Of a stretch of 64,000 nt of DNA, positions 4,043 through 39,040 are shown in pieces. Where the stretch lies: IMG/VR virus record IMGVR_UViG_3300033997_000092, positions 197,033 to 261,032 of that record; one strand, given 5' to 3'. Both the position numbers and the translations under genes were made by a program. A model generated the notes under the pieces. The model had not been told where the DNA came from. It searched no databases and was given only the letters and a program-made list of their open reading frames with translations. Each line of letters begins with the position of its first letter. Position 1 is the stretch's first letter.

Positions 4043-5050
4043 TTAGAACAACTGCCCGTAAGCTAAGTACAGATCAAACTTACTATCGTTGTTGGCTTGC
4101 ACAGGAGCGTTGAAGCGCAGACGTCCATTTCCACCAATACCAGAAGCACTTACCAAGAAACAGAAATCATCTGTGTCAAACGGGCTATTGCCGTAAGAGT
4201 CAATCAGTTTTGCCTTTAAATTTGTCAACACTGTTGCTGATGTGAAATCAGGAACGATAACTGCCCAAGTAGGAACAGCTAAGTTGTATTGTACATCACC
4301 AGCTTCATAATCAAACTTACCGAAGTAGGCAAATGCCATAAGCACGGTACCTGCTGTACCTGACGCCAGTTTACGAATACGGAAGCGTGTTGCAGTTACT
4401 TCTGGGAAGCGAATGATTTGGTAACCTGTTACGTTCAGTACAGAAGTAACCAGCTCTACCCAAGCACTACCGTTATAGTATTCGATGACCATCTGACGCA
4501 TAAACGTGTTTGCAGCAGTACCTTGTTTGATACCGAAGCAGTTAACGTCTATAGGACGATTATATTCAAATTCAAAAACTTCGTTGGTGTTTGTGCTTAC
4601 AGTCACATAACTTGTTGTCAGACCTGCGAAGTTTGCTTCGGAACTCTGCTTGTACATAAACAGTTCAAACAGTTTGTGGTCACGGTAATCACCATACGCT
4701 TTAAAATTCGATGGGCCATAAACCAAGTGATTGGCGAAATTGGTACTTACAACACTTCCGCCTTGATACACGTTCACAGTCTCACCAGCATATTTGGCAA
4801 CTATGTCTGCGCCTTTCAACAAAGAACTACGCTGAGTCAATTGCACTTCAGATACAGATGGATACGACAGTGTTGCCAGGAAAGCGTTTTTGCAGTTTTG
4901 GATAAGGTTAGCTGCGTTTGGAGCAAAACCAATACCATCGAAATCTGTAGGAGGTGTGCCTTCGAAAGCATACACCAGCATGTTTGTGTTTGCTGGAAAG
5001 TTTACTTGCATACCAGCAATCATTGTTTCAGTTGCGCCAAATACGTGCAT
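4043..5050 (-). CDS. Family 'L' virion protein with discoidin-like insert
   Basis: AFEGTPPT; IEYYNGSAW...FPEVTATRFRIR; PTWAVIVP. Confidence 0.65.
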   Translation of the reverse strand: MHVFGATETMIAGMQVNFPANTNMLVYAFEGTPPTDFDGIGFAPNAANLIQNCKNAFLATLSYPSVSEVQLTQRSSLLKGADIVAKYAGETVNVYQGGSVVSTNFANHLVYGPSNFKAYGDYRDHKLFELFMYKQSSEANFAGLTTSYVTVSTNTNEVFEFEYNRPIDVNCFGIKQGTAANTFMRQMVIEYYNGSAWVELVTSVLNVTGYQIIRFPEVTATRFRIRKLASGTAGTVLMAFAYFGKFDYEAGDVQYNLAVPTWAVIVPDFTSATVLTNLKAKLIDSYGNSPFDTDDFCFLVSASGIGGNGRLRFNAPVQANNDSKFDLYLAYGQLF

Positions 5051-5057
5051 GTTTACC

Positions 5058-5399
5058 TCACGATAAGTTTAACACTATTGTAAAATTACTCGATTGTCCG
5101 ACCGAAGCAACGATTGGTGTGACACCAGCTTCAAAATCTAAGACATCGCCATAGAAGAATCCATCTAACACAACTGGACTCACATTAACAGTGAAGTTAG
5201 CAACACTGTCTTGGTAAAACAGATTGTTTTCATTTTGACTTGCATTCGGGAATAAAGGAGCACTCACTCCTTCGAGAGGCCTCAAAATTCTAAATGTCTT
5301 TGGGTCCAGCGCTACAGATACCTCTACTGTCTCACCAAACAAAGCACCAGAATCAAAACCAGGACCATAACGTCCACTTGCTTTTACTAAGTTGCTCAT
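5058..5399 (-). CDS. Family 'T' virion-associated protein
   Basis: NFTVNVSP...FYGDV...VTPI similar to 2395..2937. Confidence 0.5.
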   Translation of the reverse strand: MSNLVKASGRYGPGFDSGALFGETVEVSVALDPKTFRILRPLEGVSAPLFPNASQNENNLFYQDSVANFTVNVSPVVLDGFFYGDVLDFEAGVTPIVASVGQSSNFTIVLNLS

Positions 5400-5899
5400 A
5401 TCACGTGCCTCACTTTAAAGTTCAATGCACGGTATGTTTGACCTAATGTCATAGATGGATTGTTGATTTTCAAATCACCATCATCATTTAAGTCCGTTAT
5501 AGTTCCTTTCATTGAGAACAGTGAATTACCGTTTACGTTGTAGGCTACGTTTGATGCACGGTCATACAGCAAGAACCAGTCAGGTACTCCAGAGGTCAGT
5601 ACAGTTACAGGAACTCTGCCTAACTGAAAGTTTATATTCAAGTCAGGTGCACTTCCTATATTTGGATAGGTTGCTTTATCAATATCGATGTAACCAACTA
5701 TCTTACCTCCACGTGCAACAATAGCAGAGTACAGTCCTGCAAAGCTGCCGAGAAAAGGATTAGATGTGTTAGTTATGTAAGCACCAACTTCCTGTGCAGT
5801 CATATAACCTTTTTCAATCAACACGAACTGATAACGAAAGCCTGAATTTTTCAAAGGATATTGGTAGATTAATGCAGCCGCATCTTTATTCATTCTCAT
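5396..5899 (-). CDS. Family 'S' virion protein (start revised to ATG 5899)
   Basis: ATGA overlap with the upstream stop; GVPDWF...GTITD...GDLKIN motif. Confidence 0.55.
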   Translation of the reverse strand: MRMNKDAAALIYQYPLKNSGFRYQFVLIEKGYMTAQEVGAYITNTSNPFLGSFAGLYSAIVARGGKIVGYIDIDKATYPNIGSAPDLNINFQLGRVPVTVLTSGVPDWFLLYDRASNVAYNVNGNSLFSMKGTITDLNDDGDLKINNPSMTLGQTYRALNFKVRHVI

Positions 5900-6813
5900 G
5901 TTGCAGTTGCCTCCAGCTTTATGTCTTCTGTTATGAAAACAATAGGAGTATAAACAGACGGCTCTTCCCTGTTTGTTTCGCATTCTGATTTATCGAATGC
6001 AAATACTGGACACCGAGTTGTTGACCAATCTAACGCAGTAGGATATCCTAAGATATTGTACATGATTGGACAAAGAAGGATTGTTTGTATTGGACGAGAT
6101 ACGCAGCGTCTCTGGTCTGTTGTAGCGTAGAATGTGTCAATTGACCATCCTACTTGGCCAGCACTAGCAACAGCAACAGTCAGTTTTATGCCTGAGCATA
6201 CGCGCTCAACCAATCCACTTACTATATTTGTCCCAGAGCCTACAATCAAACCCAAGTCTTGCCAACTTCCATTCACAAGACACTCAAGGCGTACTGATGT
6301 TGGGCGTTGGTTTGTAGCACTGGCTATACCTGGAGCGTATTTAACATCTTTCACAAAGCACGGTTCAAATGTCTGCACTATTTCAGCAGATATGAAATCC
6401 GTTCCCCATACAATTGGAATGTTCCTTTGTGGAGCAGCCAAGCTGTAGTGTGGCGTGTAGAATGCGAATATGTCTCTTGGGACAGTTGTGCCAAAGTACA
6501 TTGATTCAGGACAAACACGTATTTCTTGCTGACCGTCGTCACTATAGGCTCCTAAGTGTTTAACCAAAGGCGCTCCATATGTTGTAGTCAACTTGTTGTA
6601 AGATATTGTCCCTAATCTGCCTGCCGCAGACAATGTATGTGAGGCAATGCAATGTTCGGTGAAATACTTCAGAGCTTCTGGTGAAGCTGGAGATTCCATC
6701 AGAATATCCAACTCACTTGTATCCATGAACAATGCAAGCCACGTATAAGCTGACCCAGATTGTCCTGCTAGTCCATTAGCAATACTTGCGTTCCAGTGAA
6801 TTAATTCCATCAA
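5896..6813 (-). CDS. Divergent family 'L' virion protein
   Basis: Similar size and position; RLECLVNGSWQDLG discoidin-like strand. Confidence 0.45.
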   Translation of the reverse strand: MMELIHWNASIANGLAGQSGSAYTWLALFMDTSELDILMESPASPEALKYFTEHCIASHTLSAAGRLGTISYNKLTTTYGAPLVKHLGAYSDDGQQEIRVCPESMYFGTTVPRDIFAFYTPHYSLAAPQRNIPIVWGTDFISAEIVQTFEPCFVKDVKYAPGIASATNQRPTSVRLECLVNGSWQDLGLIVGSGTNIVSGLVERVCSGIKLTVAVASAGQVGWSIDTFYATTDQRRCVSRPIQTILLCPIMYNILGYPTALDWSTTRCPVFAFDKSECETNREEPSVYTPIVFITEDIKLEATAT

Positions 6814-6834
6814 GAATCTCCAACGTAGGACTGC

Positions 6835-7401
6835 TTAACGTGGAACTACCAGGTTACCGCAGATGGTGATGTCGATATTTGCTAATGTTGCGTCACGAAT
6901 CTCAGGAGACTTCATACGGAATATTTGACCACGTTCAAATACTATTGAAGTACCGCCTGTAGATGCAAACACGCCTGAAGTGGCACCAGCAGCAAACGTC
7001 AGTGTGCCTACTTGGGTCGCTACTCCACCTACCACACGCTCAACAATGAATTGAGAAGTTGCAGTTGCCGCAGTTGTTGCTACAGCCAGAGAGTTTGCAA
7101 AGTTTGCACCAATTTGGAAAGTACGTGCGGCTATGTGTTTACACACAATGTCCAAAGACTTCGGACGGTCGAATATAGTTAGACCTATATCATATACGTC
7201 GAATTCAGTGTTTTCCGCCAGCACCCACTTGTTCAATTGGGCATTGAAAATGTATACGCCATTCGTGATAACCACACTGCCTATTACTTCAAACAGTTGT
7301 TTATCGACAGCACCGACAACAGAAGGCAATACTGAGCCACTGTTTTCTGCTGTACGGGACAGGCGACTTGATTCTAACAAGCTTAAACCATCAGATAACA
7401 T
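6835..7401 (-). CDS. Tail-fibre-type protein with C-terminal beta-sandwich
   Basis: YDIG...ATTAATA...VGTLTFAAGATSG...DATLANIDITI pattern seen in phage fibre C-termini. Confidence 0.5.
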   Translation of the reverse strand: MLSDGLSLLESSRLSRTAENSGSVLPSVVGAVDKQLFEVIGSVVITNGVYIFNAQLNKWVLAENTEFDVYDIGLTIFDRPKSLDIVCKHIAARTFQIGANFANSLAVATTAATATSQFIVERVVGGVATQVGTLTFAAGATSGVFASTGGTSIVFERGQIFRMKSPEIRDATLANIDITICGNLVVPR

Positions 7402-7411
7402 TGTTCGCTCC

Positions 7412-7639
7412 TTAATTGACGCGAGCTTCGCCTGTTAATGGGACAGAGAATTCAACACGCAAAGTGTTTGAATCTACCGATGAAACTGACTTAGGCAGTA
7501 TCTTTTGGAGCTTGCCTTGCCAGTTAACAAACACGTCCACAAGAACATTAGTTCTTCCAAGATTGTGTGGGATGCTCCACACAGTGTTTGCATGATCTTG
7601 TTTGTGCGAATAGCCTGCACCACGAACTTTAAGTGTCAT
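7412..7639 (-). CDS. Small fibre-module protein (WxIxHNLG module)
   Basis: A single copy of the ~65-aa module also found in 7652, 8348 and 12614. Confidence 0.55.
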   Translation of the reverse strand: MTLKVRGAGYSHKQDHANTVWSIPHNLGRTNVLVDVFVNWQGKLQKILPKSVSSVDSNTLRVEFSVPLTGEARVN

Positions 7640-7651
7640 AGTTAGGCCTCG

Positions 7652-8272
7652 TTACATACAAAGAACAGTACCAGTCACTGCATTAGTGAATGTCAATACT
7701 GTTTGGTTAGTTGTTGTGTGTTGGACTGAGCTAGGTAATAACTCAAATCCATCCGATGTAATGAAACGGATGATAGGAGCATATCCCAGCATGTGGTTCA
7801 CAGTTACTTCTGTTGTAGCCACGTCCACTTCCATTTCATATGCAACATCAGGCTTAGTCATGCCGTCCAGGTTACCTATCATTATGATAGCGTGACCAGT
7901 AGTTGCTTGCGCGAAAGTAATCTCAACTGTATCAGCATCAATGCCTTCAACGCTGTCAGGAACAACAAGCTGGTTATCGCTGTTGTATACTTGGACAATT
8001 ACTTTAGCACTGTTCATACCGTGTGGGACAGTCCACACAGCACTTGCAGAGTCTTGCTGGTGTATGTAAGTATTACGCTCTTGCAGCAGAGGTACCCACA
8101 GTACACTTTGACCATACGCTATAGCAAACAGCAAACGACCATCTACTACAGCTACACGGTTTGGAACAGCATATTGTACGCCAGCAGAGTCATCACCTAA
8201 AACAACATGACTCAAAGCATTACCTTGCATGTCCAGACCGCCGAACATCGTTAATCCGCCTAAGACCTTCAT
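7652..8272 (-). CDS. Fibre protein with two WxVxH(G/N)xx modules (start revised to ATG 8272)
   Basis: RBS AAGGTG before MKVLGG; the longer ORF runs through a terminator. Confidence 0.55.
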   Translation of the reverse strand: MKVLGGLTMFGGLDMQGNALSHVVLGDDSAGVQYAVPNRVAVVDGRLLFAIAYGQSVLWVPLLQERNTYIHQQDSASAVWTVPHGMNSAKVIVQVYNSDNQLVVPDSVEGIDADTVEITFAQATTGHAIIMIGNLDGMTKPDVAYEMEVDVATTEVTVNHMLGYAPIIRFITSDGFELLPSSVQHTTTNQTVLTFTNAVTGTVLCM

Positions 8273-30300: not shown

Positions 30301-31978
30301 AATCTATCTGTGGAAATTCCACATTCAAATAGTCTGTTTTCTTTATCGTTTCTTCCTTGTCCACATATATAAAATCGAGGACCAACTTATAGTCTTCACC
30401 GGCGGCTGTAGCAAGGAAAATGTTCTGATCGTTTACTTCGACCATGCCTACACGCGAAGATACCAAGAAGCCTTCGCTAACAACGCTGCCATCAGAAAAC
30501 AATATGTCGGCGTACACTTTGTAGTAGTTGCCTTGATTGAAGTCTGTTACAGTAGTCTCTGTTGCAATATTACCGTACTGGTCAAATGTAACCAAAGTGT
30601 AGGCAGGCTGTATTTCTACAGGAATAGGACTTACCAAATTCTCGACTATCAGAATTTGCTTGTTAGCACTCAACTCAGCACCATCAAAAGCACGATACAG
30701 GACCTGCATCAATACATTCTGGTCTTGGATAACACGTTTAGCCCGGATAGTAGATGTGTCCAACTCCGCATACTGGTCGCTGTCCAGTGACCACACGATG
30801 TTTTCAGTGTCTTGAATAGTGAAAGTGTTGTTGCCTATCTTACCTAACAACTCATACTTCTCAGATGCACCTGGTTTAAGAACACTGGCACCTTTTATAA
30901 CAAGTGAATCAGGCTTAATCGGAATACCGTACGCCAGCACAACTATGTTCTTGGATATTTCGGTACCCATAAACGTAGCTATTACTGTTGTTGATTGGCT
31001 GATGCCTGTTTGTGGGTCACGAAACATTGTAGTAGGCTTCGTCTGCGTCATTAATCCCGCCGTGTCCGACAGGGTGTTAGGAATCACAGTTGTTACTGTA
31101 GTGTCATCCCAAAACACCTTAACATAGACATTGTATTCCGTAGAAGCTGATACTACGTTTGGTACCATAAGCTCAACACGCTCTATCCCAGGAGTCTCCA
31201 GCCGAGCAAAGTCTTTTGGATAGAACATGGCTGACATACTGACATACAGGTATGTTTTGGAATACAGGCCAATGTAAATATCTTTGATTACTTCTTCTAT
31301 TGGAGCAAACTTGTAGAACAGTTCCGATATTCTGTAATCAACAAGAGCCTCGACTATTTCTGGATCATCTGTGTCAGGATTTAATTCGCGTGACATCAAT
31401 GCCATCAATTGGTTGCCAATAGCTACTTTCTGTGCTTCGTCCAGCTTGTCGTAATCCAGACGGCGACGCACGTACTCCAAATCACCCGCACCCAAGTTGA
31501 TGCTCAGATCTTCTGCTAGGTTAGCTCCATCAACAACAAGGTTAACGTGCGATGTGCTGAACCAACTACCGCCGTCGATATTCAGTTTGCCTGGAACAGG
31601 ACTGAAGTTCACATAGTCTTGAGAAAACAAGTTCTGCACTTGGAATCCGCGGTTCAACAGAAAGCTGATGAATTTTGGATATACAGGAGTGTTGTTAATC
31701 TCGCTGTACTTGGACAGTTGGTAGAAGCCTTTGCGAATATTACTTCCGTTTATCTCAAGGATATCACGGTGAATATCAAAGCCTATGTGCCGAATCATTT
31801 CATCTATAATTTCAGGATTAGTATTCCTGTCGATTGCCCGTAAGTTTTCCAACATACGGATGAACTGTTTGACGTTTTCTTCTGTGTAATCGTGGATGAT
31901 GTCATAGAGTCTGACCCATGCAGGTTCTTCCTCACGCATCAACTCTACCAACATATCAGATAGGCGTTTAGATGTCAT
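27338..31978 (-). CDS. Baseplate wedge subunit (gp7/gpI-like N-terminus) with multiple Ig-like repeats
   Basis: Follows the gp6/J-like gene; repeated I.GP..V.E...F...A.WS.G Ig-like units. Confidence 0.65.
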   Translation of the reverse strand: MTSKRLSDMLVELMREEEPAWVRLYDIIHDYTEENVKQFIRMLENLRAIDRNTNPEIIDEMIRHIGFDIHRDILEINGSNIRKGFYQLSKYSEINNTPVYPKFISFLLNRGFQVQNLFSQDYVNFSPVPGKLNIDGGSWFSTSHVNLVVDGANLAEDLSINLGAGDLEYVRRRLDYDKLDEAQKVAIGNQLMALMSRELNPDTDDPEIVEALVDYRISELFYKFAPIEEVIKDIYIGLYSKTYLYVSMSAMFYPKDFARLETPGIERVELMVPNVVSASTEYNVYVKVFWDDTTVTTVIPNTLSDTAGLMTQTKPTTMFRDPQTGISQSTTVIATFMGTEISKNIVVLAYGIPIKPDSLVIKGASVLKPGASEKYELLGKIGNNTFTIQDTENIVWSLDSDQYAELDTSTIRAKRVIQDQNVLMQVLYRAFDGAELSANKQILIVENLVSPIPVEIQPAYTLVTFDQYGNIATETTVTDFNQGNYYKVYADILFSDGSVVSEGFLVSSRVGMVEVNDQNIFLATAAGEDYKLVLDFIYVDKEETIKKTDYLNVEFPQIDLLSINIEGPDAVVEGRVARFIAIANWSNGQRSIINQADWYSTGGNVDNQDVLNVNIDSTGVAQMPLVTDNSVGLVRVSTQRYTDYQTITAQKFVTIQKNSRDLIGILTDVANTINEGQSVQMRFTARWSTDSRTEVLPTQVIVYGDDALTQILATATNVGNALQFQSFSQIEIENNPDFQFIDAETGLTHPMVMLKYTEGPDKVQGAIHIKAVYTNGNVQQYVVPVVAIPRIPKVERIESTIPLQLAEGNRYFFPTIGYYDNGETQEVNATWMGYDQMGETDNLPININNGQFPLDRIVEALIGIDRTTIEQMAIDNENLSVDQVRKLIQGEPIFANPSNRPVTGQTWPSKLGILMAQYDGVLLNRTLIQTRYIDEDETIQLVGKFYAQEVTQPLTVVNAPLQPHDRIDSYYISGPVEIEANESMMYSYALVMDYDDEGEEYPVSSDWEIDFYRDVDFDQQRELIRYLVEVDGKEDILPMSSDGSGTRVSVDMLSKIDMEEILPIASVVDIDGDGYLYPKMNVDARLILITNYDDGISTLTETLNIYMKKINSILRGLNMKITGPSGLISYDFKSLILDEPNQWAFDSLDGTLYYQLSVDLERTDNPVAGPPPGLVLWRAEPTGNGVSLDEATGRLYIAPQSDDSQVTLVASYTEEFRETEESAEVFTETVEARYVITVTASKALDIIELIGPNFAQDDTVFYPNVRVLRRDGSTAIAADVLSWEIVNGPKGLEVNDRFSFKIPRLDTDTTMTLKAIGREGQREITRDFVFNLLAGFVPEDLLVDANSPGYKDNSVINLVAMLKLRNNPTPIDVTSACIWMLDTKMTGLSIERNTGRLTTPYVEQDTYIDIRCVYVLGGFRQEKKFRILLQSSFSIYWTAGFNVINTTYFNLIWSENKFKRLTSVDTGKFTVLPNSTDYLYFACPKVLVPLRMAAVPSINPDVDWGNLEPGVDVVRTYLDGMTETWIIFKSVKRGFGQAEFSVAFKR

Positions 31979-33431
31979 TCAATGCACCTTTTCTTTCTGT
32001 GTACTTGACTAACACTGTGACTTGGTTAGGCGCAATGTATTCAAGTTTTGACCTGGGTTCAATGGGTTGGATAGGCTCTAATACACGAACATAGTCCAAA
32101 CCTTCGTAGCGTTTCTTATCAGCACCGAATGTAGCAAGGTCTTTCAAGTCGCTGATTTCTAACTTGCGTCCAAGCACACCACGGCGGCGCCTGAAGTAAT
32201 CGGCTATTGCTTGCTCGGTACGGGCTTTCCATGTTTCCCGTGATTGGTCTTCGTTGATGTATACTTCCATGACAATGTTAGTCAGTATGCGCTCTGGGTT
32301 ACATGGCAGTATCATTACATGCTTGTTTTTAATCTTTTCTGCCCATGCCAAGAACTTCGTCCATTGTCCTGATTGAGGGTTAGGATTAGTGCCTCCCCAA
32401 CTGCTTGTGCTTTTCGGCAGCACACATACACGCACTACGTTCATGTAGGTCAAATCATCAGGGGCTATGTCACGCTGGCCTTGAATAACAACGTCAGCCA
32501 CATCCGGGTACATGCCTATATTACCCAACCATGAATCATGTCGATCAAGATTGCGTTTTGATTGGAACACATAAGGTGCGTACATTTTAAGTACGTCTGT
32601 ATCCATCGGCTCACTTCCACCAACAGAAGCTTCGTCAGTGATACCACCTATAGTAGTATCGTTCTCATAGCGTACCCGCACACCGCTGGTTCCGATATTG
32701 CCAGATTCACCAGAAGTAAGAACATATCGTACTACAATACGATCACTGCTATTTAAACGCACACCAAATTGGCCGTTACCGAACATCAAGCTCACATCAC
32801 CTTCAGCGGTTGTGTTTGGAATGTACATGGGTTCATCGGCATCAACATCGAATATGCTGTCGTAAGGAACAAAAGCTTGTCGAGTACCACTTACAGGATT
32901 CTCGCTGTATACAAACATATCGTCCATTGATACAACGTGTCCCGGTACACCAAGTACAATCTCAGGGAAGTCCAAATCCACATTGCCCAAGTTGAATGTT
33001 TTGAGTTGTATGGTACCTTGTCCCATGATTACTTTACGTGATTCACTTGGACGCAACATAACGCTTTCACGGTTGTAGAAAGGCAAACCGTTTATAGTAA
33101 ATGCACTGAACTCGGGAATAGATTTGTTCACAGTGCTGTTGTTGCGTAATGTGACTGTTACCGTGCTGCCTGTCTTACGATTCAGTGTTTGTCCTAAATC
33201 ACGGGCGTTTGCAAGTACGCTGCTTGCACGGCGCGCTCTACGCATAAATGCTTCACGGAAAGCAAAGTTGATATATGCTTGGTTGACTTCAGTGCTACCT
33301 GCTAAGGCATCTGCAATAAAGATAGCCAGGCGGCTTTTGCTTTTATCAGACCATACATAATCGGAGGCAAAGCGTGTAAGGATAGCCTGAACGTGTTCCT
33401 CAAATGACGCTGCGTTTATAATTGGGTTCAT
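31968..33431 (-). CDS. Baseplate wedge protein (T4 gp6/baseplate J-like)
   Basis: REAFMRRARRASSVLANARDLG; LMFGNGQFG; VRYVLTSGESGN; SVGGSEP. Confidence 0.85.
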   Translation of the reverse strand: MNPIINAASFEEHVQAILTRFASDYVWSDKSKSRLAIFIADALAGSTEVNQAYINFAFREAFMRRARRASSVLANARDLGQTLNRKTGSTVTVTLRNNSTVNKSIPEFSAFTINGLPFYNRESVMLRPSESRKVIMGQGTIQLKTFNLGNVDLDFPEIVLGVPGHVVSMDDMFVYSENPVSGTRQAFVPYDSIFDVDADEPMYIPNTTAEGDVSLMFGNGQFGVRLNSSDRIVVRYVLTSGESGNIGTSGVRVRYENDTTIGGITDEASVGGSEPMDTDVLKMYAPYVFQSKRNLDRHDSWLGNIGMYPDVADVVIQGQRDIAPDDLTYMNVVRVCVLPKSTSSWGGTNPNPQSGQWTKFLAWAEKIKNKHVMILPCNPERILTNIVMEVYINEDQSRETWKARTEQAIADYFRRRRGVLGRKLEISDLKDLATFGADKKRYEGLDYVRVLEPIQPIEPRSKLEYIAPNQVTVLVKYTERKGALNDI

Positions 33432-33435
33432 GTTG

Positions 33436-33894
33436 TTATCCTAATTTCTGTAATCCGAATGAAACTTTCTTGCCTGTTACTTCCAAACGTGGAATATCTA
33501 CTTTGAGTTCACACACGTAGGTGCTAGTGCCGTAGTCCATTCCAATATCAATAGTGTCGATGTACACACCAAGGTCACCACTTGCTGTACGGTCGGCTGC
33601 CGTTTGTATAACAGTTAAGATTTCGTCCCGTGTTATTGTGTCGAATGGCTCAAACAACAAGTCCATTAACCTACGCACTCCCCACTCAGGTCTCCACCAG
33701 CGGCTGCCTCTTGGAGTAGATAGTAGCAACAAGAATTGTTGTACTTCTGCTTCGCCGTCATAAACAAACTCGTCACCTTTCTTGCCAATATCAATATTGA
33801 CATCACGGAATACATACGTTCCTTTATTCGTAGTTTCTTCCATTGACTCACGGGCAGCGACCTGTTGTTCATGCGTTTTAATAGTTCTGAACAT
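33436..33894 (-). CDS. Baseplate gp25-like protein
   Basis: LLLLSTPRGSRWWRPEWG...LLFEPFD signature. Confidence 0.85.
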   Translation of the reverse strand: MFRTIKTHEQQVAARESMEETTNKGTYVFRDVNIDIGKKGDEFVYDGEAEVQQFLLLLSTPRGSRWWRPEWGVRRLMDLLFEPFDTITRDEILTVIQTAADRTASGDLGVYIDTIDIGMDYGTSTYVCELKVDIPRLEVTGKKVSFGLQKLG

Positions 33895-34184
33895 TACCCT
33901 GCTCCTACGTTGCTTGAACCACCCATCGAAGTATCTCCACAGGTAGTTTTATCTCCCATACGTGTGACGCCACGTTTATTAACAAAAACTTTGGAAGAAC
34001 CTGTTGCTGTAGGAACGTGACAGCTTCCATTACAGCAGTGTAGCTTGTATTTATCTCCAGTACGCACAGCAGGAAGACCGTTAACAAACACATTGTTACT
34101 GCCTTGAATTGCTGGTACAGGAGGAAAGCAAGGACTGTGTCCCATCGTCATGTCAGGTCCTTTACGGATGACTGGTTTACCCAT
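33894..34184 (-). CDS. PAAR-repeat spike tip protein (T4 gp5.4-like)
   Basis: GH.CFPP...GSNNVFVNGLPAVRTGD...H...GSSKVFVN..GVTRMGD..CGD...GSSNV. Confidence 0.9.
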   Translation of the reverse strand: MGKPVIRKGPDMTMGHSPCFPPVPAIQGSNNVFVNGLPAVRTGDKYKLHCCNGSCHVPTATGSSKVFVNKRGVTRMGDKTTCGDTSMGGSSNVGAG

Positions 34185-34315: not shown

Positions 34316-34852
34316 ATGGTAGAAGTTCATGCGTACACCGACGGTTCATGTATCAACAATCCGGGACCAGGCGGCATAGGCATCCACATGAGGAAGCCCG
34401 CTACAAAAAAGAAGAAGAAAATCAGCCTACCGTTCGGTTATACGACAAACAATGAAATGGAATTGATGGCTATATTGATCGCACTTATATCATTAAAGCC
34501 TGGAAAGTTTGTTACAGTGTTCTCCGACAGTGAATATTCTATAAATTGTCTGTGTTTGTGGCACCACGGTTGGGCAGCAAACGGTTGGCGTAAACCAGAA
34601 CACAACAAAAAGCTGATACAAACCATAGTCAAGTGCTTTTACTTTCATCGTGTAGAGTTTGTTAAAGTCAAAGCTCACTCAGGAATCAAGTACAACGAGA
34701 GTGCAGATGCTTTGGCTAGACAGGGCAGCGCTATCGCCCAAAAGAAGCGAAACAGTCCTGATTGTTTTACGTTAGAGCAGTGCCTACAGCAAGCTGAATT
34801 GTACTTTAAGAAATATGCAGGCTTCAAAGCACCAAACATAATAACAGCATAA
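34316..34852 (+). CDS. rnhA: Ribonuclease HI
   Basis: YTDGSC.NNPGPGG, TTNNEMELMA, SDSEY, VKAHSG..YNESADALA catalytic motifs. Confidence 0.95.
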   Translation: MVEVHAYTDGSCINNPGPGGIGIHMRKPATKKKKKISLPFGYTTNNEMELMAILIALISLKPGKFVTVFSDSEYSINCLCLWHHGWAANGWRKPEHNKKLIQTIVKCFYFHRVEFVKVKAHSGIKYNESADALARQGSAIAQKKRNSPDCFTLEQCLQQAELYFKKYAGFKAPNIITA

Positions 34853-34900: not shown

Positions 34901-36001
34901 ATGTCTGGAATTAACTTCCAACCAACTTTCATCGTACAATTGGGTGCGAATTCAAGCCAACACCGTGTTGTAGTAAGCGCACCAAGCAAAGGCGCTCCAT
35001 TTACTATAGCTGCAGGTGACGGTACTACTAACGGCCGTGTATTTGCTCCACAAGTAGGCGAAGATCAGTGGGACGCAGAACGTGTCGCATTGTTAGAAGC
35101 TCACCTTAATGCAGCGCTGCCTGGAATCCTGAACAATGTGGATTTATCTAAAGCTGGTGCGGCCGACCACGTAAACCTTATGCTGCGTGGTGTAGCTCAG
35201 TCTTACATGGAAACAACCTTGTTTGACGACAGTGTTGATGATTTGCAGCAAATTGGCGATACTGCTATGACTGAAATCGCTAAGCTGTCCAAGCAAAACA
35301 ATCCTCCTAAGCGTGGACCAGGTTATCCAATTGACCCAGTGGATCCAGAAGAGCCTATCTTTGAAGAAGGTGAGTTGGCTGTCACTATTATGTCTGCACT
35401 GTCTGCCCAGTTCTTGCAGGCTAACGGTACGTTGTTTGTGGGCTCTGGTATCCCAGGCAGCAAGTATAATATTGTCAGCAACGACTTGTTAGAAATCGGC
35501 ATGACTGCACACCGTCGTGGACAGTGGGACACAGGCCGTACATGGGACGAAGATGAAATCAACCTGGATTTAGCTACTACTGTTCCTGCTGATCGCTGGA
35601 ACGTAAGCTGGTCAATCGGTTTGAAAAATCCTGAAGTTGAACTTATTACTGACCTGTTCGACATCGAATTTATCATGGGCCTGCGTAACGACGGTACTCT
35701 GGCTGAAGGCGAATCAATTGTTTATCAACTGGAATACAATCCAGAAAACACTGCGCCGAATAGCCCATACGTGTTTACTGAAACAACAGGTATTATCAAC
35801 AGTATCGTAGATAGCCGTGGTGATGCGGAACTGCGCTGTGTGCAGAACAGTAGCTCCCTGCACTGGGTTAAATCTTCGTTGATTCCTCCTCTGGCTGCCG
35901 ACGCTCCTGTTGAAGGTATCTATGCTGCTCAAATCCGCGCTACCAACAAGCAGACTGGTACCGTGCTGATCAACACCTTGACTGTATCTGCTATGGTGTA
36001 A
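34901..36001 (+). CDS. Two-domain protein, probably virion/head-associated
   Basis: Strong RBS, Pro-rich linker (PGYPIDPVDPEEP), beta-rich C-domain, preceded by CTAATTT like the structural genes. Confidence 0.4.
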   Translation: MSGINFQPTFIVQLGANSSQHRVVVSAPSKGAPFTIAAGDGTTNGRVFAPQVGEDQWDAERVALLEAHLNAALPGILNNVDLSKAGAADHVNLMLRGVAQSYMETTLFDDSVDDLQQIGDTAMTEIAKLSKQNNPPKRGPGYPIDPVDPEEPIFEEGELAVTIMSALSAQFLQANGTLFVGSGIPGSKYNIVSNDLLEIGMTAHRRGQWDTGRTWDEDEINLDLATTVPADRWNVSWSIGLKNPEVELITDLFDIEFIMGLRNDGTLAEGESIVYQLEYNPENTAPNSPYVFTETTGIINSIVDSRGDAELRCVQNSSSLHWVKSSLIPPLAADAPVEGIYAAQIRATNKQTGTVLINTLTVSAMV

Positions 36002-36016
36002 CACAGGAGTCCTGGC

Positions 36017-36304
36017 ATGAGAATTTTTGTTAGCTTGAGTGCTGAACAGTTTTCTGTTACATTGCGTGAAGACGCAGGTATGTCAACAGCACAAATCCGT
36101 GAAAAGATTGATGCTATAAACAAGGAAACTAAATCGAATGCCAGGATAACTTCTATGGCAAAGTCAATTGCCAGTGTTCCCAAGCAGTTTACTATAACAG
36201 GCACTAAACGCGATGTAGTGTTTGTTGCCGCTGGCTGGTACGATACCGATCCAGATGAACATCAGTTGAGCCAAGACTGGAATCTGGATTTCCTTAAAAG
36301 TTAA
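36017..36304 (+). CDS. Small protein with MRIFVSLS leader
   Basis: RBS AGGAG; first 8 aa identical to the next gene. Confidence 0.6.
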   Translation: MRIFVSLSAEQFSVTLREDAGMSTAQIREKIDAINKETKSNARITSMAKSIASVPKQFTITGTKRDVVFVAAGWYDTDPDEHQLSQDWNLDFLKS

Positions 36305-36314
36305 GGAGCGCACT

Positions 36315-36734
36315 ATGCGTATTTTTGTTAGTTTGAGTAAGGCGGACGTGGCGCTCAAACCTGTTACGGGTCCAGGTCTTCCTTATGCAGATTTCGAGGA
36401 TAGATTACTATACGGAGATCCTAAGGATAGCGCTAAATACTTATCTAAATACTTTTCTCTGCCTGTTCAAGGCGCGGATCAGTTTGATGACGGTAACTCT
36501 TTTGCTGGTTGCTGGCTTGAAATTTTAAGTGAAGGTAAGATAAGAACTTTTGCTTTGGTTGTCAAAGACGCAAGCATATCAGAAACAGTTAAGTTTTCAG
36601 GAGCCAAGAACGTAATCTTATTTGAAGTTGAAGATAAGAAACAGTTGTACTTAGGTAAACCTGTTGTCATAGGTAAAGCTTATACTGCCAATCGTGTAGA
36701 TCCACTGATGTATACACTTAAAAATTTTGTGTGA
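36315..36734 (+). CDS. Small protein with MRIFVSLS leader
   Basis: RBS AAGGAG; first 8 aa identical to the previous gene. Confidence 0.6.
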   Translation: MRIFVSLSKADVALKPVTGPGLPYADFEDRLLYGDPKDSAKYLSKYFSLPVQGADQFDDGNSFAGCWLEILSEGKIRTFALVVKDASISETVKFSGAKNVILFEVEDKKQLYLGKPVVIGKAYTANRVDPLMYTLKNFV

Positions 36735-36747
36735 ACCACTTTACTGC

Positions 36748-36783
36748 AAAAACCCACCTCAGCAATGTCGTGGGTTTTTTTTT
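36748..36783 (+). terminator. Rho-independent terminator
   Basis: AAAAACCCAC...GTGGGTTTTTTTTT. Confidence 0.8.
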
Positions 36784-36839: not shown

Positions 36840-37280
36840 ATGATTCAACATGCAAATTTACGTGATATTTTACAACTGCCCTCAGGTCCACTAAAAGAAC
36901 TGTTTATCAGTCCACATGATAAATTCCGCACAATGAATTGCCGTACTGTGGAATGCAGTTTTGAGTATCTGCCACTAACACCGTACACTCAGGCATTTGC
37001 TGAATCCATCTGCGCTTACCTAAACAAGAAATTTGTTGATGGACGTATTCATAAATTCGATGCCGATGATTTCTGTGCTGTCCACGAAGATACAGCCTAT
37101 CCTTACTCCCACACGATCATAGTGTGCTTGGACAAAGACGAAGATGACAGGCTTGTGATCAACGACACTATTGTCCGGGAATACGAAGGCTCAGTTTACG
37201 TGATGCCTCCGTTGACTAGCCACGGTATAGCTAAAGGCAAAAGTTCGCGCATTTCATTCATTATCTGGGCTAACCAGTAA
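36840..37280 (+). CDS. 2OG-Fe(II) oxygenase
   Basis: H-E-D...SHG...SRISF: HxD...H facial triad plus RxS 2-oxoglutarate motif. Confidence 0.75.
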   Translation: MIQHANLRDILQLPSGPLKELFISPHDKFRTMNCRTVECSFEYLPLTPYTQAFAESICAYLNKKFVDGRIHKFDADDFCAVHEDTAYPYSHTIIVCLDKDEDDRLVINDTIVREYEGSVYVMPPLTSHGIAKGKSSRISFIIWANQ

Positions 37281-37843: not shown

Positions 37844-39040
37844 ATGAATTTTCAACAATCGAATCCTATTATCATCGGCGGCGATACTGAATTCAATGAA
37901 GTAAACTGGCTCGATAACAGCTATATCATGGCAGCCGACCGTATTATGGTGGAAGGCGTTCGTAGTGGTAATCGCACAGGCGTAAACACTTACAAAGTAT
38001 TCGGCCACTTTATCAATACTAACTTGATGGAAGGCTACCCTCTGCTTACAACAAAGCAAGTATTCACCCGTCCTATGTTCCATGAACTGATTTGGATGTT
38101 GAACGGTGAAACAAATATTCAATACTTGCTGGACAATGATGTACATATTTGGGACGGCTGGGCTAACACTAACGGTGACTTAGGTCCTGTATACGGTGAA
38201 CAGTGGCGTAATCGTGAAGACACTCAGATCCTGATGCGTAACGACCCGTACTACGAACAACGCCTGTCGTACTATGAAAGCAACGGCTACACAAACGTAG
38301 CTACCAACCCAACGCTGGATGTGTACAGCCGTCGCATTGACCAAATTCAGGTAGCATTGGATCGTTTAAAAACAAACCCAGACTGCCGCCGCATTATCGT
38401 AGATGCGTGGAATCCTGGTCTGCTGCCTACAGACGAGCATCCAACAAAACAAGCTGAACAGGGCCGTCAAGCATTACCTGCATGTCATGCGTTCTTCCAA
38501 TTCGGCTCCAGTGAACATCATCGTAACGATATTACTATCGATGACTTAGGCATACTGAACATCTATCGTGTAGGCAACAAAGTCTATATGAGCGGTGTTG
38601 AAATTGATGTCCAGTTGTCTGATGTTGAGCAAATGGATGAAGTAGGTCTGTTGCAGCTTATCCGCCGCTACAAAGATAGCCGTGTTCCATTTAAGCGTAT
38701 GTTAGATACTCACCTGCACTTGCGTAGTAGTGATGTGTTCTTGGGTCTGCCGTTTAATATCAGTTCCTACGCTGCTTTGTCTGGTTTGTTCTGTGCTGTT
38801 CTTGGTATGATACCCCGCGGTCTGACACTCAGCTTTGGTGACATGCACATTTATAGCAACCACGTTGAGCCTTTGCAGAAGCAAGCGAATAACTTGGAAA
38901 ACACTAAGTACCCACCAAAGCTTGTAACTATTGGTGTTGGTCCTGAGCAAAACGCCGATTTGAAGAACCTCAGCATTGATTGTTTCCGTGTGTTGCAATA
39001 CAGTCACTGTGGTAAAATCACAGCCGACGTGGCCGTGTAA
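37844..39040 (+). CDS. thyA: Thymidylate synthase with insertions
   Basis: NRTGVNT, YPLLTTK, IWDGWA..NGDLGPVYGEQWR, RRIIVDAWN, ALPACH, RSSDVFLGLPFN, GDMHIYSNH. Confidence 0.95.
   Translation: MNFQQSNPIIIGGDTEFNEVNWLDNSYIMAADRIMVEGVRSGNRTGVNTYKVFGHFINTNLMEGYPLLTTKQVFTRPMFHELIWMLNGETNIQYLLDNDVHIWDGWANTNGDLGPVYGEQWRNREDTQILMRNDPYYEQRLSYYESNGYTNVATNPTLDVYSRRIDQIQVALDRLKTNPDCRRIIVDAWNPGLLPTDEHPTKQAEQGRQALPACHAFFQFGSSEHHRNDITIDDLGILNIYRVGNKVYMSGVEIDVQLSDVEQMDEVGLLQLIRRYKDSRVPFKRMLDTHLHLRSSDVFLGLPFNISSYAALSGLFCAVLGMIPRGLTLSFGDMHIYSNHVEPLQKQANNLENTKYPPKLVTIGVGPEQNADLKNLSIDCFRVLQYSHCGKITADVAV

What the first reader, a model, noticed from the sequence alone, without database searches (positions are those of the whole stretch)
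36017..36734. Two otherwise unrelated proteins share the N-terminal leader MRIFVSLS
Seen: the first 8 aa are identical but encoded with synonymous differences (ATGAGAATTTTTGTTAGCTTGAGT vs ATGCGTATTTTTGTTAGTTTGAGT), so selection acts on the peptide. The remaining sequences do not align. Established analogy: T4 internal proteins share a 10-aa capsid-targeting sequence removed by the prohead protease. Inference: this is a phage-specific packaging tag for proteins injected with the DNA, possibly anti-defence cargo.
Basis: partly seen in the sequence, partly recalled or inferred. Interest (0 to 1): 0.6.

Follow-up and report, generated by a model that had tools for sequence, protein, structure and literature searches.

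The report
Shared N-terminal tag on phage cargo proteins
Two neighbouring genes of a 261-kb jumbo phage start with the same nine-residue peptide, which also heads a dozen other small proteins of this phage and many in its relatives (several encoded next to the head-maturation protease), so it is most likely a tag that loads varied cargo proteins into the virus particle, though nobody has tested that.

Summary
ORFs 36017-36304 (95 aa, "A") and 36315-36734 (139 aa) both begin MRIFVSLS, with 3 synonymous and 0 replacement differences, and they have no other detectable similarity.

The 139-aa gene inherited its leader. A close relative has leader + 96-residue "B" domain + the same C-terminal domain (78% identical). 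The window lacks exactly 288 nt in frame, just after codon 10.

The leader is not limited to this pair:
- A profile trained only on a 319-kb relative ranks A first and the 139-aa protein fourth among 325 N-termini of this genome. No internal position among 75,960 reaches 14 bits.
- The other top hits (MKIKVFVSES...) lie directly downstream of the prohead protease gene. A DarA_C-domain protein there has a weaker, leader-like start.
- In the 319-kb relative the same slot holds seven consecutive genes that start MKILVS.S.
- Serine codons switch between AGY and TCN, so selection is on the peptide.
- AlphaFold places the leader outside the folded domains.

Best reading: a clade-specific virion-loading tag, working like the T4 capsid targeting sequence, on exchangeable cargo. 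Packaging, cleavage and any anti-defence role are untested. It is a new variant of a known kind.

The parts
34316..34852 (+). RNase H gene. It is the first gene of the rightward gene string that contains the finding.
   Evidence: PHROG 531, E 6.5e-46. The order RNase H - structural homolog - leader genes - 146 aa - 172 aa - ThyA is kept in relatives L006, L058 and G001.
34901..36001 (+). 366-aa protein directly upstream. It is a homolog of a virion structural protein.
   Evidence: tblastn: 28.6% identity over 52% of the query to Pseudomonas phage PA5oct gp383, annotated 'structural protein, ESI-MS/MS'. It is 41% identical to the syntenic L006 protein.
36005..36009 (+). Shine-Dalgarno AGGAG of gene A, 7 nt before the ATG.
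   Evidence: Read from the sequence.
36017..36304 (+). Gene A, 95 aa: a 9-11 residue leader followed by a small ferredoxin/ACT-like alpha/beta domain.
   Evidence: ORF. AlphaFold gives pLDDT 81.8 and pTM 0.73; residues 1-11 have no secondary structure, residues 1-6 have pLDDT below 50, and the fold starts at strand 12-17. Homologs: P0003, P0004, the G001 copy and the C-terminal half of P0006.
36017..36043 (+). Leader of A, MRIFVSLSA.
   Evidence: Top score (20.1 bits) of all 325 N-termini under a profile trained only on leaders of relative G001.
36303..36308 (+). Shine-Dalgarno AAGGAG of the second gene. It overlaps the TAA stop of A.
   Evidence: Read from the sequence.
36315..36734 (+). Second gene, 139 aa: leader + 3 residual residues of a lost B domain + C' domain (mostly beta, function unknown).
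   Evidence: ORF. It is 78% identical over 92% of its length to the C-terminal part of the 235-aa protein P0002 of a close relative. The C' domain in the model of P0002 has pLDDT of about 65-75.
36315..36338 (+). Leader of the second gene, MRIFVSLS.
   Evidence: Rank 4 (17.1 bits) in the same scan.
36339..36349 (+). Remnant of the B domain (K-A-D) and the deletion junction, at about 36346|36347.
   Evidence: The DNA alignment with L003/L004 shows one clean 288-column gap (96 codons) starting 32 nt after the ATG. B residues A-[A/Q]-D are conserved in L003, L006 and P0006.
36747..36783 (+). Hairpin plus T-run, the likely intrinsic terminator that ends the gene string.
   Evidence: MFE -14.8 kcal/mol, z -2.87. 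It is 100% conserved in L003/L004 while its flanks vary. The simple consensus scan does not call it because the loop is too long.
36840..37280 (+). Conserved 146-aa gene that marks the right edge of the variable slot.
   Evidence: Homologs follow the slot in L003, L006, L058 and G001.

Best explanation
MRIFVSLS(A) is one form of a clade-wide N-terminal leader. Its shape is Met, usually Lys or Arg, three hydrophobic residues, then Ser-x-Ser-Ala/Ser. I infer that it acts as a virion-loading tag, most likely binding the prohead core or scaffold as the T4 capsid targeting sequence does. Proteins that carry it would then be packed into the particle and could enter the host with the DNA.

The slot between the 366-aa structural-protein gene and the 146-aa gene is a hot-spot where leader + cargo cassettes are gained, fused, split and deleted:
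- this phage: leader-A and leader-C'
- L003: leader-A and leader-B-C'
- L006: leader-A and leader-B, followed in frame (one TGA between) by a third domain
- L058: a single leader-B-A gene
- the 319-kb relative G001: seven leader genes in a row.

The window's 139-aa gene arose from leader-B-C' by a 288-nt in-frame deletion. The deletion removed the B core and its Ser-rich linker but kept the ribosome site, the start codon and the leader.

Shown: the anatomy, the deletion, peptide-level selection, restriction of the motif to N-termini, and co-occurrence with genes next to the head protease. Inferred: targeting to the virion, possible removal by the protease, and injection.
For: 1. The leader forms a class of N-termini. 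A profile trained only on G001 leaders scores A at 20.1 bits (rank 1 of 325) and the 139-aa protein at 17.1 bits (rank 4). At 14 bits or more there are 5 N-termini and 0 of 75,960 internal positions. Simple regexes give 4-6 N-terminal matches against 0.004-0.02 expected.
2. Ranks 2, 3 and 5 (MKIKVFVSESA, MKINVMISESA), plus two MKIK[V/I]FVSESS genes that my gene caller missed, lie between the head maturation protease (PHROG 18299, E 1.4e-86) and the scaffold-like, structural and capsid genes. A neighbouring 156-aa protein (MRVLVSIAK) matches the looser regexes but scores only 4.4 bits on the profile. It is a Pfam DarA_C protein (47.4 bits, cutoff 27) and hits PHROG 1926, 'released from the phage upon host infection'. 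Phage P1 Dar proteins are packed in the head (PMC9024508).
3. Relatives show the same picture. G001 has eight leader genes after its protease and seven consecutive MKILVS.S genes in the syntenic slot. NCTB, G003, G004 and G005 have leader-like genes after the protease. The DNA pattern gives 10 hits against 0 control hits in G001.
4. Selection is on the peptide. Among leaders, Ser is coded AGC/AGT/TCA/TCT and Arg AGA/CGT, and Leu, Ile and Val wobble positions vary.
5. The leader lies outside the folds. Residues 1-11 of A are unstructured, and residues 1-9 of leader-B-C' have pLDDT below 50, next to a B domain with pLDDT of about 90.
6. In every rearrangement the leader stays at the N-terminus of the product. 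In the B-A fusion the internal A part has lost MRIFV.
7. Most bearers are small and basic (pI 9-12, genome median 6.7), as expected for DNA-associated internal proteins.
8. The upstream gene is a homolog of an MS-verified virion protein.
Against: - There is no proteomic, cleavage or injection evidence for any bearer. No cultured member of the closest subclade was found here.
- The leader lacks the Glu-terminated motif of T4-type protease sites, and nothing is known about this protease's specificity. It has no Pfam or PDB sequence match.
- Leader-bearing genes also follow the tail tube gene, so the target may not be the capsid.
- A and the 139-aa protein are not basic (pI 5.7 and 7.7). They sit beside baseplate and nucleotide-metabolism genes, not head genes.
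- Keeping the leader after the deletion is also what any deletion that preserves expression would do, so that single event is weak evidence.
- Gene calls were made with a crude home-made caller, and score thresholds were chosen after seeing the data.
- The protease + A complex prediction gave no verdict.
Confidence: 0.55

Rival explanations
1. The leader does direct proteins into the virion, but to a part other than the capsid interior. Candidates are the tail-tube lumen or the baseplate/spike complex, by analogy with cargo loading on contractile injection systems.
For: The most widely conserved bearer in the clade is a 222-229-aa protein encoded right after the tail tube gene. G001 and G000 have a second small, very basic bearer there. 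The finding's slot lies next to the PAAR, gp25-like and gp6-like baseplate genes.
Against: The largest group of bearers lies directly downstream of the prohead protease, next to a DarA_C protein with a leader-like start. Gene position is a weak guide to location in the particle; from my own knowledge, T4 internal-protein genes are also scattered.
Confidence: 0.15
2. The shared N-terminus is only a relic of common descent. A and B would descend from one duplicated gene whose first strand stayed conserved, and the 139-aa gene kept it by accident of a deletion. The peptide would have no function of its own.
For: The two genes are adjacent. Profile-profile alignment of A and B extends to about 15 columns. 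The 139-aa protein clearly inherited its leader by deletion.
Against: The same leader heads at least a dozen proteins with unrelated sequences, at three loci of this genome and in every relative examined. It is predicted to lie outside the folded domains. It has been kept through saturating synonymous change while everything after it became unalignable.
Confidence: 0.1
3. The leader is a recognition signal for a cytoplasmic machine rather than for the virion: an N-terminal degron for a host AAA+ protease, a chaperone handle, or a nascent-peptide effect on translation.
For: Met-basic-hydrophobic x3 resembles the ClpX N-terminal recognition motif 2. This comes from my memory of Flynn et al. 2003 and was not tested here. 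The strict restriction to N-termini would fit.
Against: This does not explain the clustering next to the head protease and tail tube genes, the DarA_C neighbour, or the conserved S-x-S-A end. The x5-hydrophobic part of that ClpX motif is not kept, by inspection of the leaders listed.
Confidence: 0.07
4. The conserved element is the DNA or RNA, not the peptide: a shared translation-initiation region, a binding site for a translational repressor, or a short homology used for cassette recombination.
For: The element sits at the start codon. The slot is recombinationally active, with fusions and deletions.
Against: Codons differ freely at synonymous sites, including AGY/TCN serine switches and AGA/CGT arginine. 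The upstream 20 nt are not conserved beyond a Shine-Dalgarno motif. The 288-nt deletion does not have the leader at its end points.
Confidence: 0.03
5. It is a secretion (Sec/Tat) or lipoprotein signal peptide.
For: A positive residue followed by hydrophobic residues and a small-x-small motif (S-x-S / S-x-A) looks superficially like a signal-peptidase site.
Against: The hydrophobic run is only 3-5 residues and is broken by Ser. The whole leader is 9 residues, with no lipobox Cys and no twin arginine (read from the sequences). From general knowledge, Sec signals need a hydrophobic core of about 7-15 residues.
Confidence: 0.02

Closest known systems
Phage T4 capsid targeting sequence (CTS) of the internal proteins IPI/II/III, Alt and others (Mullaney and Black 1996, as summarised in PMC5694885)
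   Same: A short (10-20 residue) N-terminal peptide is shared by otherwise unrelated proteins. From my own knowledge, the cargo genes are variable and partly clustered, and the T-even IP loci are hyperplastic with only the CTS conserved. Many bearers are basic. In T4 the tag binds the prohead core and is portable to foreign proteins.
   Different: There is no sequence resemblance, and the conserved end is S-x-S-A/S, not a Glu-terminated protease site. The protease belongs to another family (PHROG 18299; no Pfam or PDB sequence match). There are more bearers (about 12 here, 20 or more in G001). Some bearers are in the tail cluster. Nothing has been shown experimentally.
Phage P1 Dar system and the DarB N-terminal packaging signal (PMC9024508)
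   Same: In P1 an N-terminal signal suffices to send a reporter into the capsid, and the cargo is injected anti-restriction protein. Here a protein with a Pfam DarA_C domain and a leader-like start (MRVLVSIAK, only 4.4 bits on the profile) lies in the protease-adjacent cluster.
   Different: The P1 signal needs more than 9 and up to 30 residues. [quoted passage not shown] Here a 9-residue consensus is shared by many proteins.
Salmonella giant phage SPN3US gp53/gp54 and other phiKZ-like head proteins with N-terminal propeptides (PMC5694885)
   Same: Diverged paralogous head proteins have identical N-termini, which the authors read as CTS-like.
   Different: SPN3US propeptides are mostly longer than 100 residues and are cleaved at an A/S/G-x-E type motif. 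Here the shared part is 9 residues, on non-paralogous proteins, in a different jumbo-phage clade (NCTB / Y3 / AD1 / JA29 relatives).
Pseudomonas phage PA5oct gp380-gp382, neighbours of the homolog of the window's 366-aa protein
   Same: Adjacent genes share an N-terminal leader (MK[IL]xE[FI]xLxE). Two of them (gp380, gp381) are annotated as ESI-MS/MS-detected structural proteins; gp382 is annotated 'hypothetical protein'.
   Different: The leader sequence is different and ends in a T4-like L-x-E. There is no homology to A, B or C'.

Membership tests
T4-type capsid targeting sequence | A short N-terminal peptide shared by proteins that are otherwise unrelated | tested here: met
   The leader heads A, C', basic head-cluster proteins and seven unrelated array proteins in G001. 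At 14 bits or more there are 0 of 75,960 internal positions.
T4-type capsid targeting sequence | Bearers are physically present in proheads or mature heads | not testable with these tools
   No proteome exists for this phage or its nearest relatives. The evidence is indirect only: position next to the protease gene, a DarA_C neighbour, and the basic pI of most bearers.
T4-type capsid targeting sequence | The tag ends in the prohead-protease consensus, (L/I)-x-E in T4, and is cleaved off | tested here: not met
   The leaders end in S-x-S-A/S. A has Glu at position 10, but the 139-aa protein and most other bearers do not. Cleavage at some other motif cannot be tested. The internal frequency of the motif is near chance (15 matches in all, 7 of them within the first 14 residues; about 5 expected, by my own hand estimate from residue composition).
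T4-type capsid targeting sequence | The tag is sufficient to target a foreign protein into the head | not testable with these tools
   This needs leader-reporter fusions in a cultured relative.
P1 Dar-type head-packaged anti-restriction proteins | DarA_C domain | tested here: met
   Met only for the 156-aa head-cluster protein outside the window (PF18789, E 2.8e-12, 47.4 bits against a cutoff of 27). A and the 139-aa protein have no Pfam or PHROG hit.
Sec/lipoprotein signal peptide | A hydrophobic core of about 7 or more residues after a basic n-region, or a lipobox Cys | tested here: not met
   By inspection of the leaders: 3-5 hydrophobic residues interrupted by Ser, and no Cys.
B-domain family (N-terminal adaptor-like domain, unnamed) | An approximately 85-residue domain with the motifs SF.N.QE..TVE, KGN...V.P and LQKAF..W | tested here: not met
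   The window's 139-aa protein keeps only the leader and 3 residues of B. The family exists in relatives: 16 hits in 1.84 billion representatives.

The most novel reading that the evidence does not exclude
A portable nine-residue virion-loading tag marks the whole repertoire of packaged, host-injected proteins of a jumbo-phage clade that includes cultured Erwinia and Dickeya phages. The slot in this window would then be a fast-evolving cassette array of such cargo, where anti-defence or host-takeover proteins could be listed from sequence alone and foreign proteins could be loaded by adding the tag.
Probability: 0.4. Interest if true: 0.75.

Novelty: new variant of a known kind. Interest (0 to 1): 0.62.

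Why it matters
If the tag works as proposed, the packaged and ejected proteins of a poorly studied jumbo-phage clade could be read from the genome: about 12 candidates here and 20 or more in a 319-kb relative. Those proteins are where anti-restriction and other early counter-defence functions tend to be found. The tag would also be a second, unrelated, very short capsid-loading tag that could be tested for protein delivery in phages of plant-pathogen hosts.

The slot in the window also shows how such cargo evolves: by fusion, fission and in-frame deletion behind a fixed leader.

Tried and rejected
- DNA search of the region against 50,697 phage records found no match.
- PHROG and Pfam scans of A and the 139-aa protein gave no family.
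- Foldseek of the A model against the PDB returned only generic ferredoxin-like/ACT/S6 folds, none with E of 0.001 or better.
- Foldseek of the leader-B-C' model against viral structures found nothing usable.
- ESM Atlas gave a Cas6-like feature match of 0.84-0.88 for the 139-aa protein. That is below the 0.9 lead threshold with a low shared-feature count, so I treat it as a lead only. A matched only ferredoxin/ACT-like folds.
- hhalign of the A and B families aligns only the first ~15 columns (probability 19.5%), so paralogy beyond the leader is not shown.
- C' and the 208-aa ORF of L006 show no similarity.
- tblastn with the B-A fusion against the phage records and a search with the same protein in NCTB, AD1 and PA5oct both found nothing.
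- The B profile found nothing in G001-G005.
- The protease profile had no relative among PDB sequences.
- Complex prediction of protease + A gave no verdict (score 0.01). This is not evidence either way.
- I looked for proteome data on cultured relatives. The AD1 and Alexandra annotations call the leader-bearing post-tube gene 'hypothetical protein'. The PaBG paper does not discuss N-termini or processing.
- I considered that the motif is also an internal protease site. Internal matches are about as frequent as chance (the expected number is my own rough estimate), and two of them lie inside repeated zinc-ribbon motifs, so I dropped this idea.
- Not used: read laying, the look-up of sequencing runs and the metagenome-contig scan.
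- No alternative genetic code was applied.

Full report
**What is in the window.** The window is the last 64 kb of a 261,032-bp virus record with direct terminal repeats (G000:C1:197033-261032). Two adjacent plus-strand ORFs begin with the same eight residues, MRIFVSLS: 36017-36304 (95 aa, called A here) and 36315-36734 (139 aa). The 24 nucleotides differ at three positions (AGA/CGT and AGC/AGT), and all three differences are synonymous. Each ORF has its own Shine-Dalgarno motif: AGGAG at 36005-36009 and AAGGAG at 36303-36308. A conserved hairpin plus T-run follows the second gene (36747-36783, -14.8 kcal/mol). Beyond the N-terminus the two proteins do not align. No other ORF of the genome starts with this exact peptide.

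**The second gene inherited its leader.** A word-index protein search found a 235-aa relative, P0002, that is 78% identical to the 139-aa protein over 92% of its length. Its contig (L003/L004) has the same gene order. There the first gene is a 95-aa A that also starts MRIFVSLSA. The second gene starts MRIFVSLAA and is followed by about 96 extra residues before the shared C-terminal domain, C'. The DNA alignment shows one clean 288-column gap in the window, starting 32 nt after the ATG, at about 36346|36347.

The extra segment is a domain in its own right, called B here:
- It appears as an 89-aa ORF in a more distant syntenic relative (L006, 46% identity).
- It is fused to an A domain in another relative (P0006; the slot in L058 holds that single gene).
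- It is found at or near the N-terminus of longer proteins in 16 clusters out of 1.84 billion representatives.

B is present in all outgroups, and the window keeps the B residues K-A-D just after the leader. The window lineage, including the near-identical contigs L005 and L007, therefore lost B by an in-frame deletion that kept the ribosome site, the start codon and the leader.

**The leader is a class of N-termini, not a coincidence of two genes.** An all-against-all comparison of SD-preceded starts found a second group outside the window, at 63-70 kb of the genome. Four genes there start MKIK[V/I]FVSES and one starts MKINVMISES. Neighbours start MKVLVSLNS and MRVLVSIAK. These genes lie directly downstream of the head maturation protease (PHROG 18299, E 1.4e-86). 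They lie upstream of a 700-aa acidic scaffold-like protein, a virion structural protein (PHROG 16710) and the capsid gene position. The MRVLVSIAK protein carries a Pfam DarA_C domain (47.4 bits, cutoff 27) and matches PHROG 1926, 'released from the phage upon host infection'. Its start matches the looser regexes but scores only 4.4 bits on the profile described next, so it is leader-like rather than a clear member.

To avoid circularity I trained a 7-column profile only on leaders from a relative, G001, and scanned the 325 N-termini of this genome. A ranks first (20.1 bits) and the 139-aa protein ranks fourth (17.1 bits). Ranks 2, 3 and 5 are head-cluster genes. At 14 bits or more there are 5 N-termini and none among 75,960 internal positions. 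Simple regexes give 4-6 N-terminal matches against 0.004-0.02 expected.

**Relatives.** tblastn with the protease places the phage among relatives of phage NCTB, the Dickeya phages JA29 and AD1, the Erwinia phages Alexandra and Y3, and Yersinia phage fHe-Yen9-02, at 43-50% identity. A profile scan of IMG/VR gave 33 loci.
- In the closest relative (G001, 319 kb, protease 62% identical), eight genes after the protease carry the leader: MKIKVFVSQSS, MKIQVMLSESA, MKILVSLCTSV, MKIRVFISESS and others.
- NCTB, G003, G004 and G005 have similar starts, for example MKIISISA, MKIFISQSG and MEIFISLSA on the DarA_C-like gene.
- In G001 the slot syntenic to the finding runs RNase H, homolog of the 366-aa protein, variable slot, homolog of the 146-aa protein, ThyA. 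That slot holds seven consecutive genes starting MKILVS[L/T/V]S[A/S] or close variants. One of them is the A homolog.
- A DNA pattern for this leader hits G001 ten times against zero for the reversed control. The hits also include a gene after the tail tube and genes at two further loci.
- In my sample of loci from the Erwinia/Dickeya part of the clade, nearly all (10 of 11) keep one leader-bearing gene of about 222 aa after the tail tube, for example MLIFLSESARK in Y3 and MLFFVSVSAPR in JA29.

**Peptide or nucleotide.** Among twelve leaders, serine is encoded by AGC, AGT, TCA and TCT, arginine by AGA and CGT, and the Leu, Ile and Val third positions vary. Upstream sequence shares only a Shine-Dalgarno motif. 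Selection is therefore on the peptide. This argues against a shared RNA element or a recombination site.

**Structure.** AlphaFold models A as a small ferredoxin/ACT-like domain (pLDDT 81.8, pTM 0.73). The fold starts at strand 12-17, and residues 1-11 have no secondary structure. In the leader-B-C' protein, residues 1-9 have pLDDT below 50, B (residues 11-97) has pLDDT of about 90, a Ser-rich linker (98-116) is disordered, and C' is a mostly beta domain of moderate confidence. The leader is therefore a free N-terminal extension, not the first strand of a shared fold. Fold searches gave no functional lead for A, B or C'.

**Interpretation.** The anatomy has these parts:
- a short free N-terminal peptide under peptide-level selection;
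- restriction to N-termini;
- attachment to many unrelated, mostly basic small proteins (pI 9-12 against a genome median of 6.7);
- a main cluster of such genes directly downstream of the prohead protease gene, beside a DarA_C protein;
- arrays of exchangeable cargo genes behind it.

This is what the T4 capsid targeting sequence and the P1 DarB signal look like functionally (PMC5694885; PMC9024508). I therefore take the leader to be a virion-loading tag, and the window's slot to be a hot-spot of leader + cargo cassettes. That function is inferred, not shown:
- No bearer has been seen in a particle.
- The leader does not end in a Glu-type protease site.
- Some bearers lie in the tail cluster.
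- A and the 139-aa protein are not basic.
- Retention of the leader after the B deletion would also be expected of any deletion that preserves expression.

The gene directly upstream is a homolog of an MS-verified virion protein of phage PA5oct. That fits late, structural expression but does not prove it.

**Membership and novelty.** The feature works like a T4 CTS but does not meet its sequence or cleavage-motif definition, and the experimental criteria cannot be tested here. I found no description of this leader in the searched literature. That literature is limited to open-access papers. I class it as a new variant of a known kind.

**Limits.**
- Gene calls outside the window come from a simple ORF/SD heuristic. 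It missed two head-cluster genes that the ORF listing shows.
- Profile thresholds were chosen after inspecting the data.
- The family names rest on HMM hits.
- The alignments used for structure prediction were shallow (5 and 10 sequences).

Noticed in passing
L008 = G000:C1:60000-72000 (outside the window), minus strand, L008:3228-9573: A cluster of nine genes lies between the prohead protease and a scaffold-like protein. Five start MKIK[V/I]FVSES or MKINVMISES, one starts MKVLVSLNS and one MRVLVSIAK. Most are very basic and K/A/S/P-rich, so they look like internal head proteins.
   Followed up: yes
L008:3228-3698 (-), 156 aa: This protein has a Pfam DarA_C domain (E 2.8e-12) and matches PHROG 1926, 'released from the phage upon host infection'. 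Homologs with leader-like starts are present in NCTB, G004 and G005 (MLISISLG, MKLLISLS, MEIFISLSA).
   Followed up: partly
L047 = G001:C1:190000-203000, minus strand, about 4556-8255: In a 319-kb relative the slot syntenic to the finding holds seven consecutive genes of 92-199 aa that all start MKILVS.S or close variants. Only one of them is homologous to A.
   Followed up: yes
L006:6321-7244 (+): The B ORF and the following 208-aa ORF are in the same frame. They are separated by a single TGA that falls exactly on the conserved Trp of the B motif AFDxW. This could be a recent nonsense split of a leader-B-cargo fusion or an assembly variant. No recoding is claimed.
   Followed up: partly
L011 (Pseudomonas phage PA5oct MK797984.1, 260677-262300): Three adjacent genes next to the homolog of the window's 366-aa protein share a different N-terminal leader, MK[IL]xE[FI]xLxE, which ends in a T4-like L-x-E. 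Two of them (gp380, gp381) are annotated as ESI-MS/MS-detected structural proteins. This suggests that leaders specific to each clade are common in jumbo phages.
   Followed up: no
G000:C1:54240-55240 (outside the window) and L048 (G001): Two leader-bearing genes follow the tail tube gene: a 104-109-aa protein with pI of about 12, and a 226-229-aa protein with a D..WY.[FY].G motif. Of my sampled Erwinia/Dickeya loci, 10 of 11 also carry a leader-bearing gene of about 222 aa after the tail tube (JA29 and Y3 show the DCDWYRFEG motif).
   Followed up: partly
P0011-P0016: The B domain also occurs at or near the N-terminus of much longer, unrelated proteins (200-388 aa) without the MRIFVSLS-type leader. 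It may be a general adaptor domain fused to variable C-termini.
   Followed up: no
L008:960-3062 (-), 700 aa: An acidic, low-complexity protein (long D/E runs) with two CxxC...CPxC zinc-ribbon-like repeats lies between the leader cluster and the structural/capsid genes. PHROG 20988 is labelled 'ATPase', but the composition looks like a scaffold.
   Followed up: no
window 37844-39040 (+): The thymidylate synthase is 398 aa and matches Pfam in two stretches, so it carries a large insertion compared with the 266-position model. The insertion is conserved in relatives (394-419 aa).
   Followed up: no
window 31968-34184 (-): Baseplate genes are transcribed divergently from the finding's gene string: a PAAR protein (33894-34184, E 5.9e-13), plus weak gp25-like and gp6/Baseplate_J-like hits below the Pfam cutoffs.
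   Followed up: no
window 36315-36734 (+): ESM Atlas feature search places the 139-aa protein nearest to Cas6 N-terminal-domain clusters, at scores of 0.84-0.88. That is below the tool's 0.9 lead level and has a low shared-feature count, so it is unverified.
   Followed up: no
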